Origin: Guillardia theta CCMP2712
Lineage: Eukaryota > Protista > Cryptophyta
NCBI RefSeq assembly: GCF_000315625.1
Contig: NW_005434641.1
Location: 77,113 to 141,112 of the forward strand
Reading direction: 5' to 3'
DNA length: 64,000 nucleotides
The notes under the pieces were generated by a model that saw nothing but the letters and a program-made list of their open reading frames with translations, had not been told where the DNA came from and did not search any database. Each line of letters opens with the position of its first letter. Position 1 is the first letter of the stretch. Of the stretch, positions 14,399 to 17,274 are shown piece by piece. A program made the translations under genes and the position numbers.

Positions 14399-17274
14399 AT
14401 GCAACCACCACCGATGCAGCCCATGATCCCAATGCAGCCTGTTCCGCAGAACCAGCAGAACCAGCAGAACCAGCAGCCGCTTACCATGCAGCAGGTATAT
14501 CCCATGTTTCAGCCGCAGATGGTACAGCTACAACCGATGCCGGGAGGACCAACCCCACAATCGATGGCACCACACGCGGTGCTTGTGTCAGCACCGGGGG
14601 CTCCACCCATGATGCCTCCCGGCTCATCTAAGCCGGGGCATGACCCAGAAGAGTTGGTTGGGGCTTATCAGGACCCGGAGCCTCTGCCTGCAGGAGCCTT
14701 TCAAGGTGGCATGCAGCCGGCAACGCTGACTTCCATGCCCGGGGGCTATCCAGGCATGGCCGGATCTGGAATACGACGTACTGGATCAGACCCTGAGAAA
14801 CTTCCAGGAGAGCCCGTGCATGCAGTGATGACAAAGCCCCCGGGAATTTCGGCAGGCAACATGATGGATCGCAGGAGGAACAAGCCACAGCCGCGCACGG
14901 CTACCTTTGTTGGGCGGTCGTATTACAAGGACCCGAAGCAGGAGCCGCTGGTTGAACCCAACTTCATCTTCCCAGATCCTGTGCCGCCCGTCCTGAGAGG
15001 ATGGCTTCCTGTCTTCACGACCCCGTGGTGGAAGTTTGACAACCCGATTGACAACTACCTTGTACGAGGATGCTCATTCGTGGTCTTCTGCTGCGCCATG
15101 TTTATCTTCTTCTTCGGATCTTACTTCTGTGAGACGTGCAAGAATGATGAACAATATTGCGAGCTCTGCGCGAGGGATATGAACGGGCCTCATAAGACTG
15201 CCTACGTCTGGTACGTGCAGCTCGTTGTTTGGTACGACTTCTTCATCCGGACCGTCTTTGGAATGTCGCTGTTGTCTCCATTCGCGATCATTGCCAACTT
15301 CTTTCTGAAGCTTGCGGACTTGCCCCCCGACATGGTTCCATCGGGGGCAAAACGATTCAGCTTCTTCCTGGGTATCATTCTCAACACCGTCCTGTTCATC
15401 CTGCACTTCATCGTAAACAGCCCTATCCAGAGAGGCCCGATGATTGCTCTCATCGTCTTCTCAGCGCTGGAGAGCATTGGCGGCTTCTGCGTCGGGTGCT
15501 GGTTCTACGGTACTTTCTTCAAGATGAGGGATCGCTGGGAACTGAGGAATGACTATCGCACGATTGCGCTCAAGGAGGAGAACCCTGCTCGCCCCATGTT
15601 TGCTGAGCACCGTGGCATAGGAGCACCCTTCTTCGCCCTGCAGCTCTACGACAACGTGATGGAGCCGTCGCATCCGTACATGTACGACCTTGTTGTCATC
15701 GGAGGAGGTTCCGGTGGTCTCTCTGCCTCCAAGGAGGCGGCTCGCCTCGGAGCGAAAGTGGCCGTGCTTGATTTTGTGTACCCTACTTTCTACGGCACAA
15801 GGTGGGGGCTCGGAGGAACCTGTGTTAACGTTGGATGTATCCCAAAGAAACTTTATCACACTGCCGCGATCTTTGGGCATCACATTGAAGAGGCTGGACA
15901 CTATGGATGGGAAGATAGCAGCCGCCCTGGCATTCCGCTGGAGGGGAAGGGGCACAAGCATGTCTGGGAAAGGCTGAGAGAAAATATTCAGGTAAGCGTG
16001 AAGCTCGATGTTTTCCCCCTGCTAACGCGGTTCTGTTAGAATCACATCCATGAGCTTAACAATGGATACATTACCGGCCTGAGGAGCGCTAAGGTCCAGT
16101 ATATCAATGCCAGGGGCAGTTTCAAGGACCCCCACACTATCATCTGTGACGCTACCTGCCCGACCTGCGACGTCGTCGGCGATCGCAAGACAGAAATCAC
16201 TGCCAGGAGGATTATCATTGCCGTAGGTGGCCGACCCCAGTACCCCAAGATCCCCGGTGCCAAGGAGTACAGCATCACCTCCGACGACATCTTCTCTTTG
16301 CAGAACCCTCCTGGCAAGACCCTTGTAGTGGGCGCTAGCTACATCGCGCTCGAGTGTGCTGGATTCTTAACTGGATTGGGTTACGAGACCAAAGTCATGG
16401 TACTGCTCCTCTCCCTTCTCTTCCTCCTGTGACTCTTGTACCCTGACAGGTCCGCTCCGTCGTTCTCCGAGGATTCGACAGGGACTGTGCTGAGCGCATC
16501 AAGGACGACATGATCAACACAGGAACAAACTTTATCGAAAGCTGCATCCCCCTAGGGATCGAGCTGCTCCCCGACGGCAAGCGTCTCGTGACCTACGAGA
16601 ATGTCAATTCCAAGGAGAAGTTCCAGGAGGCGTTCGACACCGTCATGTTTGCTATCGGCCGCGAGCCCTTGACCAAGGAGCTCAACCTTGAAGCTGCCGG
16701 AGTGAAGGTGGCTGAGGACAAGAAGATCTGGACATGGAATGAGCGGACGACTGCCCCTCACATCTACGCTCTTGGTGACGTCGCTCACAAGGTTCCTGAG
16801 CTCACTCCCGTGGCTATCAAGCAAGGGCTCATGCTCGCCAAGCGCATCTGGGGCAACAGCAAGCTCCTCGTCAACTTGGACCATGTGCCAACGACTGTCT
16901 TCACGCCGTTGGAGTATGGAAGCATCGGCTTCTCCGAGGAGCGTGCCATCGCGACCTTCGGGGAGGACAACATCGAAGTCTATCACTCGGAGTTCACTCC
17001 TCTCGAGTACACGGTCCCGCATAGGAGGTCGAGGTGCTACGCCAAGCTCATCGTCAACTACCTTGACAAGCAGCGTGTCATTGGCTTCCACTACCTCGGG
17101 CCCAACGCAGGAGAAGTGACGCAGGGCTTCGCGTCCGCCTTCGTTGCGGGACTTTCCTTAGACGAGTGGAACCTCGTGGTCGGCATTCACCCCACCTGTG
17201 CCGAAGAAATGGTCAGCCTGCGCCGCACCAAGCGCAGTGGCCTTGACCCGAAGAAATCGGGTTGCTGAGGTTAA
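14399..17274 (+). CDS. TXNRD: Selenocysteine-containing high-Mr thioredoxin reductase with N-terminal Pro/Gln/Met-rich region and DUF4395-like membrane domain (~925 aa; exons 14399-15991, 16040-16399, 16450-17274)
   Basis: [12 protein letters not shown] (FAD), [13 protein letters not shown] (redox disulfide), [18 protein letters not shown] (NADPH), [20 protein letters not shown]. Ends TCG GGT TGC TGA GGT TAA = S-G-C-U-G-stop. Both introns are phase 0 GT-AG. The upstream TM domain has AKRFSFFLG...[14 protein letters not shown]. Confidence 0.93.

What the first reader, a model, noticed from the sequence alone, without database searches (positions are those of the whole stretch)
14399..17274. 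Membrane-embedded selenoprotein thioredoxin reductase: DUF4395-like TM domain fused to a Sec-TrxR
Seen: one uninterrupted 531-codon exon joins a Pro/Gln/Met-rich N-terminus, a ~4-TM domain (~15037-15510; NPIDNYLVR...[13 protein letters not shown]...[10 protein letters not shown]...[14 protein letters not shown]) and the FAD/CVNVGC domain of a high-Mr TrxR that ends GCUG. Established: animal-type TrxRs are soluble homodimers whose familiar N-terminal fusion is glutaredoxin (TGR). The KRF...G...FCxGC..Y signature is my recognition of the uncharacterised, mainly bacterial membrane family DUF4395, which I recall lying next to thioredoxin-like and sulfurtransferase genes in Actinobacteria. Inference: this is a Rosetta-stone fusion in which NADPH -> FAD -> CVNVGC -> Cys-Sec passes electrons to the membrane CVGC. 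That would make it a possible trans-membrane or membrane-anchored thiol/selenol relay, and would suggest a redox function for DUF4395. I know of no description of such an enzyme.
Basis: partly seen in the sequence, partly recalled or inferred. Interest (0 to 1): 0.92.

Follow-up and report, generated by a model that had tools for sequence, protein, structure and literature searches.

The report
Membrane-embedded selenoprotein thioredoxin reductase
The alga Guillardia theta makes one long protein in which a selenium-containing thioredoxin reductase is fused to a four-helix membrane domain of unknown function (DUF4395) carrying its own cysteine pair; this undescribed enzyme form gives the first functional clue for that membrane family.

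Summary
Confirmed. The window is Guillardia theta CCMP2712 nuclear DNA. A three-exon gene (14399-15991, 16040-16399, 16450-17274) encodes 925 aa. It has a disordered Pro/Gln/Met-rich N-terminus, a Pfam DUF4395 domain (54.8 bits, cut-off 24.5) and a complete high-Mr TrxR ending Gly-Cys-Sec-Gly, with a SECIS-like element about 160 nt after the stop.

Spliced ~3.2-kb contigs from three studies and an MMETSP transcript carry the whole ORF. The public gene model covers only the TrxR part. The same fusion occurs in three cryptophytes, Cyanophora, Pygsuia and Cantina, and its TrxR domains form one clade (SH-aLRT 99) apart from canonical TrxRs.

All DUF4395 family-invariant residues, including CxxC (C364/C367), are kept under strong purifying selection. 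They lie on the cytosolic face, where the TrxR sits. Elsewhere DUF4395 is fused to thioredoxin-like domains and to glutaredoxin plus a SufS-like domain. In Actinomycetes it lies beside rhodanese genes.

Best reading: the membrane CxxC is the built-in electron acceptor of the Sec tail, as the glutaredoxin domain is in TGR. Electron transfer and the final substrate are inferred, not shown. A trans-membrane relay is disfavoured. I found no paper describing it. The scan noted the UGA/SECIS on this window before.

The parts
14269..17578 (+). Extent of the spliced mRNA as seen in assembled RNA contigs (5' UTR, ORF, 3' UTR)
   Evidence: one contig per run in three runs from three studies covers 14269/14273/14316 to 17569/17578, and both introns are removed.
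14275..14304 (+). Short upstream ORF (9 codons) in the 5' UTR
   Evidence: sequence. It lies inside two of the three contigs.
14399..15991 (+). Exon 1, 531 codons: N-terminal tail, DUF4395 domain, linker and start of the TrxR FAD domain in one open frame
   Evidence: The MMETSP transcript product P0018 is identical.
14399..14983 (+). Low-complexity Pro/Gln/Met-rich N-terminal region (aa 1-195), with no signal-peptide-like hydrophobic core
   Evidence: It varies in length among homologues. dN/dS is 0.21 against the Hanusia-like orthologue.
14984..15514 (+). DUF4395 membrane domain (aa 196-372): conserved pre-TM1 segment and helices 219-250, 268-287, 294-305 (short), 316-339 and 342-361
   Evidence: Pfam. 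AF2 model with pLDDT 84 and pTM 0.77. dN/dS 0.04.
15488..15499 (+). CVGC (Cys364-Val-Gly-Cys367) at the cytosolic end of TM4, at the N-cap of helix 365-390
   Evidence: Cys364 is invariant and Cys367 is present in all but one of 101 family members aligned.
15515..15679 (+). Linker (aa 373-427): a conserved amphipathic helix (FFKxRDRWxLRxDY), then a low-confidence flexible stretch
   Evidence: dN/dS 0.02.
15680..15991 (+). Start of the TrxR domain (Met428, where the public gene model begins), with GGGSGG and the redox-active CVNVGC (aa 475-480, nt 15821-15838)
15992..16039 (+). Intron 1 (48 nt, GT..AG)
   Evidence: The joint is present in contigs of three runs.
16040..16399 (+). Exon 2 (120 codons), TrxR FAD/NADPH domains
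16400..16449 (+). Intron 2 (50 nt, GT..AG)
16450..17274 (+). Exon 3 coding part: NADPH and dimerisation domains, ending Gly-Cys-Sec-Gly-stop
17266..17268 (+). In-frame TGA read as selenocysteine (aa 924)
   Evidence: The same TGC-TGA-GGx-TAA ending occurs in the Chroomonas and Hanusia-like transcripts. All fused homologues are called up to ...GC, except the Cantina protein, which ends ...SC.
17426..17494 (+). SECIS-like stem-loop (AUGA, 12 nt, AAA, mini-stem, GA)
   Evidence: Rfam SECIS_1 scores 17.6 bits, below the gathering score of 35. Fold. The same architecture lies about 160 nt after the stop in three cryptophyte orthologues.

Best explanation
This is a genuine, expressed Guillardia theta gene for a membrane-integral selenoprotein thioredoxin reductase. 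Shown: the 925-aa product has four parts. They are a disordered N-terminal tail, a four-helix DUF4395 membrane domain, a roughly 55-residue linker, and a complete high-Mr TrxR (FAD site, CVNVGC, NADPH and dimerisation domains, C-terminal Gly-Cys-Sec-Gly read through UGA with a 3' SECIS-like element). Inferred from charge distribution and the AF2 model: the N-terminus and the TrxR both lie in the cytosol. The DUF4395 CxxC (Cys364/Cys367, at the N-cap of the helix after TM4) sits on the cytosolic membrane face, together with the other family-invariant residues (Arg223, Asp280, Arg284, Ser293, Lys318, Glu358). Inferred mechanism: electrons flow from NADPH to FAD, to Cys475/Cys480, to Cys923-Sec924 of the partner subunit, and then to the membrane CxxC. 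The DUF4395 domain would therefore occupy the position and role that the N-terminal glutaredoxin domain has in thioredoxin-glutathione reductase. The reduced CxxC would then act on a substrate at or in the cytosolic leaflet. That final substrate is unknown. The partners of DUF4395 elsewhere are rhodanese and DUF1416 neighbours in Actinomycetes, and fusions to thioredoxin-like domains and to glutaredoxin plus a SufS-like domain. These point most to sulfane-sulfur or chalcogen (S/Se) chemistry, with a lipophilic oxidant as the alternative.
For: Gene model and domains. Identity with G. theta proteins and with an MMETSP transcript ORF of 923 aa. Full-length spliced contigs in three studies. UGA and SECIS-like element conserved in orthologues. 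The same architecture occurs in Guillardia, Hanusia, Chroomonas, Cantina, Pygsuia and Cyanophora. The TrxR domains of all fused proteins form one clade (SH-aLRT 99) apart from 53 canonical TrxRs. The single apparent exception is a genomic contig with an intron between the DUF4395 exon and the TrxR exon. Purifying selection on the DUF4395 domain (dN/dS 0.04) and the linker (0.02). CxxC and Lys318 are invariant or nearly so across 14 fused and 87 bacterial members. The AF2 model is confident (pLDDT 84-88) and places CxxC at a helix N-cap after TM4. Positive-inside pattern in bacterial members (K+R per sequence: pre-TM1 1.5, loop 1 0.1, loop 2 3.9, TM3-4 turn 0.3, post-TM4 2.4) gives an N-in/C-in topology. 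Independent DUF4395 fusions to Thioredoxin_8 and to glutaredoxin plus a SufS-like domain. Rhodanese lies next to DUF4395 in 19 of 30 actinomycete loci and DUF1416 in 10. G. theta also has a separate canonical Sec-TrxR paralogue, so this copy is specialised.
Against: No experiment or computation here shows electron transfer to Cys364/Cys367. The two-chain docking test gave no verdict. The flexible linker means that no fixed interface is required or demonstrated. Assembled contigs cannot exclude an additional internal transcription or translation start at Met428 giving a soluble TrxR. The only raw-read run available was 3'-biased. The gene neighbourhood is not conserved in a Chloroflexota-dominated sample, so the sulfur link may be lineage-specific. 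No solved structure resembles the domain, so its chemistry cannot be borrowed from a known fold.
Confidence: 0.6

Rival explanations
1. DUF4395 is only a membrane anchor. The domain merely tethers an ordinary TrxR to a membrane, where it reduces soluble thioredoxin locally, and the CxxC takes no part in the electron path.
For: The linker is long and poorly ordered. No conserved extracytoplasmic cysteines exist that would require a relay.
Against: A simple anchor would not need every family-invariant polar residue and the CxxC to be retained across cryptophytes, a glaucophyte, a breviate and a stramenopile, with dN/dS of 0.04. DUF4395 is independently fused to thioredoxin-like and glutaredoxin domains. 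The fused TrxRs form a distinct old clade rather than recent re-tetherings.
Confidence: 0.15
2. The main product is a soluble TrxR. An internal promoter or initiation at Met428 (nt 15680), as in the public gene model XP_005832744.1, would yield the functional enzyme, and the upstream ORF would be little or not translated.
For: The deposited G. theta model starts at Met428. Contigs cannot show transcript starts, and the raw-read run was 3'-biased.
Against: Exon 1 is one uninterrupted frame. Three independent RNA assemblies and an MMETSP transcript run from about 130 nt upstream of ATG 14399 to the 3' UTR. The upstream part is under strong purifying selection at the protein level. It is a Pfam-significant domain conserved in all orthologues. 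The public model also stops at the UGA, so it is an automatic truncation at both ends.
Confidence: 0.05
3. The CxxC is a metal or Fe-S ligand site. Two CVGC motifs brought together by the TrxR homodimer (or CxxC plus the extra C-terminal CxxC in many stand-alone bacterial members) would bind Zn or an Fe-S cluster, so the domain would be structural or sensory rather than a dithiol/disulfide centre.
For: Many stand-alone and other fused members carry a second CxxC 15-25 residues after the first. That gives a four-cysteine arrangement typical of metal knuckles.
Against: The second CxxC is absent from the TrxR fusions and from many bacterial members. The first CxxC sits at a helix N-cap, as in thiol-disulfide oxidoreductases. 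The fusion partners are disulfide reductants.
Confidence: 0.1
4. The domain is a trans-membrane electron relay. The cytosolic CxxC would pass reducing equivalents across the membrane to the Cys-rich loop between TM1 and TM2 (CxxC...CxxC in cryptophytes), as DsbD/CcdA do.
For: Cryptophyte and some other fused members have four cysteines in loop 1, which is predicted to be extracytoplasmic. G. theta TM1 also holds three cysteines.
Against: Loop 1 is nearly absent in bacterial members. Its cysteines are missing from the Cantina and Pygsuia proteins and from the unnamed transcripts P0006 and P0008/P0161. No cysteine in the membrane core is conserved. All conserved residues lie on the cytosolic face. 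Loop 1 has low model confidence.
Confidence: 0.08

Closest known systems
Thioredoxin-glutathione reductase (TGR/TXNRD3; glutaredoxin fused N-terminally to a Sec-TrxR)
   Same: It has the same high-Mr TrxR module (TIGR01438 above cut-off) with CVNVGC and a C-terminal GCUG. The extra redox domain, with its own CxxC-type centre, is placed N-terminal to the FAD domain, where the flexible Sec tail can service it (established knowledge for TGR).
   Different: The N-terminal partner here is a four-helix integral membrane domain (DUF4395), not a soluble glutaredoxin. No Glutaredoxin Pfam hit is found. The fused TrxRs form their own clade, separate from Grx-fused and canonical TrxRs.
Canonical soluble Sec-containing TrxR (TXNRD1/2 type, also present in algae)
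   Same: About 52-56% identity over the whole TrxR module, with all catalytic motifs and the UGA/SECIS mechanism.
   Different: It is soluble and has no membrane domain. G. theta has such a paralogue on another contig (53% identity, starts just before GGGSG, ends GC-TGA-G).
DUF4395 (PF14340), stand-alone proteins of about 150 aa in bacteria
   Same: Same domain with the same invariant residues and the CxxC after TM4. The Atlas structural match has TM 0.60-0.69.
   Different: Bacterial members are stand-alone or fused to thioredoxin-like domains. The eukaryotic fused form adds a conserved pre-TM1 segment, in some lineages a Cys-rich loop 1, and the TrxR.
DsbD/CcdA, DsbB and VKOR (membrane thiol-disulfide oxidoreductases)
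   Same: They are small helical membrane proteins whose cysteine pairs exchange electrons with thioredoxin-fold partners. VKOR and DsbB are four-helix bundles with a CxxC.
   Different: No sequence family match was found. The Foldseek match to VKOR is not significant (E 0.7). The cysteines here face the cytosol rather than the periplasm or lumen, and no membrane-core cysteine pair exists as in DsbD/CcdA.
DoxX-SseA membrane oxidoreductase complex of Mycobacterium tuberculosis (recalled from Nambi et al. 2015, not read here)
   Same: A small integral membrane protein is paired with a rhodanese-type sulfurtransferase, like the actinomycete DUF4395-rhodanese neighbourhood.
   Different: DUF4395 is not detectably related to DoxX (hhalign probability 0.2%).

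Membership tests
High-Mr (animal-type) selenoprotein thioredoxin reductase, TIGR01438 | Whole-protein profile score above the curated cut-off | tested here: met
   620.4 bits against a cut-off of 475.85.
High-Mr (animal-type) selenoprotein thioredoxin reductase, TIGR01438 | FAD-binding GxGxxG and N-terminal redox-active CVNVGC | tested here: met
   GGGSGG at aa 435-440 and CVNVGC at aa 475-480. These columns are invariant in the alignment of 37 TrxRs.
High-Mr (animal-type) selenoprotein thioredoxin reductase, TIGR01438 | Pyridine-nucleotide and dimerisation domains | tested here: met
   Pyr_redox_2 and Pyr_redox_dim (E 5.4e-25). The AF2 model of the module has pLDDT mostly above 90.
High-Mr (animal-type) selenoprotein thioredoxin reductase, TIGR01438 | C-terminal Gly-Cys-Sec-Gly encoded by an in-frame UGA | tested here: met
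   TGC-TGA-GGT-TAA at 17263-17274. The same ending occurs in two orthologous transcripts.
High-Mr (animal-type) selenoprotein thioredoxin reductase, TIGR01438 | SECIS element in the 3' UTR | tested here: inconclusive
   Rfam SECIS_1 scores 17.6 bits, below the gathering score of 35. The folding z-score is about 0. However, an AUGA...AAA...GA stem-loop of the same design lies about 160 nt after the stop in three orthologues, with different helix sequences in Chroomonas.
High-Mr (animal-type) selenoprotein thioredoxin reductase, TIGR01438 | NADPH-dependent reduction of thioredoxin/DTNB; selenium incorporation | not testable with these tools
   Needs enzyme assays and 75Se labelling.
DUF4395 (PF14340) | Pfam profile score above the gathering threshold | tested here: met
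   54.8 bits against 24.5, E 1.6e-14, aa 240-373. The six-frame genome search gives 57 bits and finds only one copy in the genome.
DUF4395 (PF14340) | Four transmembrane helices | tested here: met
   Hydropathy and the AF2 helices 219-250, 268-287, 316-339 and 342-361, plus a short helix at 294-305.
DUF4395 (PF14340) | Family-invariant residues: PKRF motif, Glu before the CxxC, and CxxC after TM4 | tested here: met
   Lys318 and Cys364 are invariant. Cys367, Phe320, Gly325, Glu358 and Arg223 are at least 90% conserved in 108 sequences, and all are present in the window protein.
Thioredoxin-glutathione reductase (TGR) | N-terminal glutaredoxin domain | tested here: not met
   There is no Glutaredoxin hit in exon 1 at E up to 1. 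The N-terminal partner is DUF4395.
DsbD/CcdA-type trans-membrane thiol-disulfide relay | Conserved cysteine pair within membrane-core helices, and a profile match to DsbD/CcdA families | tested here: not met
   No such Pfam hit was found. The only conserved cysteines form one CxxC at the cytosolic end of TM4.
DoxX (PF07681) | Profile-profile similarity | tested here: not met
   hhalign probability 0.2%, E 0.36, between 86 DUF4395 and 15 DoxX sequences.
VKOR/DsbB fold | Significant structural match | tested here: not met
   Foldseek best VKOR row has E 0.7 and TM 0.21. VIA-align top hits are generic helical bundles with Z of 9.2 or less, within the background for helical models.

The most novel reading that the evidence does not exclude
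DUF4395 would be a new family of cytosol-facing membrane thiol-disulfide oxidoreductases, a mirror image of DsbB/VKOR. It would process sulfane-sulfur or selenium species (persulfide, thiosulfate, selenite or perselenide) at the membrane. In Actinomycetes it would be fed by rhodanese/DUF1416 and recycled by thioredoxin-like proteins. In several protist lineages it would be hard-wired to NADPH through a dedicated, ancient class of Sec-TrxR. The G. theta enzyme would then be the first NADPH-driven, membrane-integral chalcogen or persulfide reductase.
Probability: 0.3. Interest if true: 0.88.

Novelty: new variant of a known kind. Interest (0 to 1): 0.75.

Why it matters
High-Mr thioredoxin reductases are textbook soluble enzymes, and the only well-known extra domain is glutaredoxin (TGR). 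This gene shows a separate, old and monophyletic class that is built into a membrane. It is present in cryptophytes, a glaucophyte, a breviate and a stramenopile, and public gene models cut it at both ends.

It also makes an open question testable: what does DUF4395 do? The family is widespread, occurring in 52 of 81 sampled actinomycete genomes and also in Thermus, Corynebacterium and Lactococcus. I found no paper on its function. The fusion, together with the thioredoxin, glutaredoxin and SufS-like fusions and the rhodanese neighbourhood, predicts a cytosol-facing redox-active CxxC. Simple thiol-trapping and knock-out experiments can test that prediction.

Tried and rejected
1. Docking test of the TrxR module against the DUF4395 domain (complex prediction): score 0.00, no verdict. 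It is not used as evidence either way. A full homodimer exceeded the size limit.

2. Fold searches of the DUF4395 model against the PDB (Foldseek; VIA-align wide) returned only generic helical bundles. The VKOR rows were not significant, so no function could be borrowed.

3. DoxX relationship: rejected (hhalign probability 0.2%).

4. Gene neighbourhood in 27 loci of a Chloroflexota/Actinomycetota/Leptospira subfamily: no recurrent partner. The rhodanese link appeared only in the class-wide Actinomycetes sample.

5. The look-up of encoding contigs on two bacterial representatives gave contigs too short for context.

6. The first related-loci run with the broad alignment failed for lack of a conserved stretch.

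7. Raw RNA reads (run X22) were 3'-tag-like and could not map the 5' end.

8. An artefactual merger of two genes is rejected. Both domains share one exon and one frame, and orthologous transcripts show the same architecture.

9. Bacterial contamination is rejected. The gene has spliceosomal introns and a eukaryotic-type SECIS, and it matches the G. theta assembly and transcriptome.

10. P0007 (DUF4395 C-terminal half joined to a different TrxR ending GGC) looks like a chimeric assembly and was left out.

11. Literature searches for DUF4395, PF14340, membrane-bound TrxR and DUF1416/SseC returned nothing relevant.
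Full report
**Observation**

The ORF listing and the sequence show one open frame from ATG 14399 to a GT donor at 15992 (531 codons). After an intron ending in AG at 16039 comes a 120-codon exon (16040-16399). 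After a second intron (16400-16449) comes a final exon that reads ...Lys-Lys-Ser-Gly-Cys-TGA-Gly-TAA and ends at 17274. The joined product is 925 aa.

Pfam finds DUF4395 (PF14340) at aa 240-373, with E 1.6e-14 and 54.8 bits against a gathering score of 24.5. It also finds Pyr_redox_2 and Pyr_redox_dim. The C-terminal 496 aa score 620 bits on TIGR01438 (TGR/TrxR subfamily, cut-off 476).

**Source and public annotation**

The TrxR part is identical to Guillardia theta CCMP2712 protein XP_005832744.1/EKX45764.1 (UniProt L1JCE3, 496 aa). An MMETSP transcript ORF of 923 aa (P0018) is identical to my whole model up to the Cys before the UGA. The window is therefore G. theta nuclear DNA.

The deposited model starts at Met428 and stops at the UGA, so it misses both the membrane domain and the Sec. 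The genome holds only this one DUF4395 domain. It also holds a separate canonical TrxR paralogue on another contig, with 53% identity. That paralogue starts just before GGGSG and ends GC-TGA-G.

**Expression**

Contigs from three runs of three different studies were laid on 13800-17900. Each run has a single contig of 3165-3218 nt running from 14269-14316 to 17569-17578, with exactly the two introns removed (GT..AG, skips of 48 and 50 nt). These are spliced transcripts that include a 5' UTR of about 130 nt (with a 9-codon uORF at 14275-14304), the full ORF and the 3' UTR.

Contigs cannot show transcript starts, and the one raw-read run was 3'-biased. An additional internal start near Met428 is therefore not excluded. 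A full-length fused mRNA clearly exists.

**Selenocysteine**

Rfam gives only a sub-threshold SECIS_1 hit at 17428-17493 (17.6 bits, gathering score 35), and the fold is not unusually stable. Even so, an AUGA, 11-12 nt, AAA, mini-stem, GA hairpin lies about 160 nt after the stop in three sequences. These are G. theta, a Hanusia-like transcript (L153) and a Chroomonas CCMP1168 transcript (L001). The Chroomonas helix has a different sequence but the same design. Both orthologous transcripts also read GC-TGA-GGx-TAA. Every fused homologue in the protein databases is called up to ...GC, except the Cantina protein, which ends ...SC.

**Conservation and origin**

A word-indexed search restricted to the DUF4395 region found 12 proteins with DUF4395 plus TrxR domains. 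An exhaustive HMMER search found more. Named sources are:
- Guillardia, Hanusia phi and Chroomonas (cryptophytes)
- Cantina marsupialis (stramenopile)
- Pygsuia biforma (breviate)
- Cyanophora paradoxa (glaucophyte)

Several unnamed transcript contigs also carry it.

In an ML tree of 12 fused and 54 other TrxR modules, all fused ones fall in one clade (SH-aLRT 99; quick IQ-TREE search, midpoint root). The one apparently unfused member, P0165, comes from a genomic contig. There the DUF4395 exon ends ...YGTFFK, and an intron precedes MRDRWELR. The fusion therefore arose once and defines a distinct TrxR class.

Between G. theta and the Hanusia-like orthologue, dN/dS is 0.21 for the N-terminal tail, 0.04 for DUF4395, 0.02 for the linker and 0.02 for the TrxR module. 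dS is near saturation, so these values are approximate.

**Anatomy of the membrane domain**

I aligned 14 fused, 7 otherwise-fused and 87 stand-alone members. Lys318 and Cys364 are invariant. Arg223, Ser293, Phe320, Gly325, Glu358, Gly366 and Cys367 are at least 90% conserved. CxxC is present in essentially every full-length hit.

AF2 models are confident: pLDDT 84 and pTM 0.77 for aa 194-429, and pLDDT 88 and pTM 0.78 for aa 194-923. They give helices at 219-250, 268-287, 294-305 (short), 316-339 and 342-361. The CxxC sits at the N-cap of a further helix, 365-390. Residues 401-410 are disordered.

In bacterial members, Lys+Arg per sequence are 1.5 before TM1, 0.1 in loop 1, 3.9 in loop 2, 0.3 in the TM3-TM4 turn and 2.4 after TM4. 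This is a clear positive-inside pattern for an N-in/C-in topology. The N-terminus of the G. theta protein has no signal-peptide-like hydrophobic core. The CxxC and all conserved polar residues therefore sit on the cytosolic face, on the same side as the NADPH-dependent TrxR.

No solved structure resembles the domain beyond generic helical bundles. The Atlas matches are DUF4395 clusters, including a DUF4395-RGS fusion in Cercozoa.

**What the partners of DUF4395 say**

Other architectures among the hits are:
- Thioredoxin_8-DUF4395, including a Pseudo-nitzschia arenysensis transcript
- DUF4395-glutaredoxin-SufS-like aminotransferase
- KdgT-DUF4395
- DUF4395-SLAC1/TehA-hemerythrin in Ostreobium

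Many stand-alone members carry a second CxxC in a short cytoplasmic tail.

In a sample of 81 Actinomycetes genomes, 52 have DUF4395. Within 1.5 kb of 30 such genes, rhodanese occurs at 19 loci, DUF1416 at 10, thioredoxin at 3, and LmeA and GlnR at 3 each. A Chloroflexota-dominated subfamily showed no recurrent neighbour.

**Mechanism**

Shown:
- the architecture
- its expression as one mRNA
- its conservation
- the cytosolic-face placement of a family-invariant CxxC, inferred from charge pattern and model

Inferred: by analogy with TGR, the N-terminal extra domain is the acceptor of the mobile Cys-Sec tail. On this reading, electrons run from NADPH to FAD, to Cys475/Cys480, to Cys923-Sec924 of the partner subunit, and then to Cys364/Cys367.

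The downstream substrate is unknown. The rhodanese, DUF1416, SufS-like, glutaredoxin and thioredoxin partners favour sulfane-sulfur or selenium chemistry at the membrane. A lipophilic oxidant is the main alternative.

A trans-membrane relay is disfavoured. Loop-1 cysteines occur only in some lineages, and no membrane-core cysteine is conserved.

**Comparison and novelty**

The TrxR module is a full member of the high-Mr Sec-TrxR family. The protein works like TGR but is not one, because it has no glutaredoxin domain. It is not DsbD/CcdA, DsbB/VKOR or DoxX by the tests run.

Full-text searches for DUF4395, PF14340 and membrane-bound TrxR found nothing relevant. The 2020 survey of algal selenoproteomes includes G. 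theta and lists domain fusions (SELENOM-pVHL, SELENOM-ShKT, GST-MSRA). It does not mention this fusion, and the word 'transmembrane' does not occur in it (PMC7539508).

I class the finding as a new variant of a known kind. It has added value as the first functional lead for DUF4395.

Noticed in passing
window 15680-17265 (public model XP_005832744.1 / EKX45764.1): The deposited G. theta gene model is cut at both ends. It starts at internal Met428 and stops at the Sec UGA, so databases list this protein as an ordinary 496-aa TrxR.
   Followed up: yes
window 14275-14304: There is a nine-codon upstream ORF in the 5' UTR. It is present in two of the three RNA contigs.
   Followed up: partly
G000:C115:158154-159496 (L004): A second, canonical high-Mr TrxR paralogue is present (53% identity). 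It has no DUF4395 domain and an apparent ...AGC-TGA-G ending, so G. theta has at least two Sec-type TrxRs.
   Followed up: partly
window aa 246-262 (nt about 15134-15184): The loop between TM1 and TM2 is Cys-rich (CxxC...CxxC) and predicted to be extracytoplasmic. It is shared by cryptophyte and a few other fused proteins but absent from Cantina, Pygsuia and bacterial members. Its role is unknown.
   Followed up: partly
window 18734-18860: A long, near-perfect hairpin downstream of the gene gives sub-threshold hits to plant miRNA precursor families (49 bits against a gathering score of 130). It is probably a foldback or inverted-repeat element.
   Followed up: no
window 24001-26000: A 2-kb stretch has only 31% G+C and strong AT skew, in a window that otherwise averages about 53% G+C.
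   Followed up: no
P0033, P0091, P0098, P0103, P0156, P0144, P0047 (database proteins): DUF4395 has other fusion architectures: with glutaredoxin plus a SufS-like domain, with Thioredoxin_8 (including Pseudo-nitzschia arenysensis), with SLAC1/TehA plus hemerythrin (Ostreobium quekettii), with KdgT, and with RGS in Cercozoa.
   Followed up: partly
L094-L123 (Actinomycetes loci): There is a recurrent actinomycete cluster of rhodanese, DUF1416 and DUF4395, sometimes with thioredoxin, LmeA and GlnR genes nearby. I found no paper on it.
   Followed up: partly
P0007 (ENA protein): The DUF4395 C-terminal half is joined to a different TrxR ending GGC. This is most likely a chimeric transcript assembly.
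   Followed up: no
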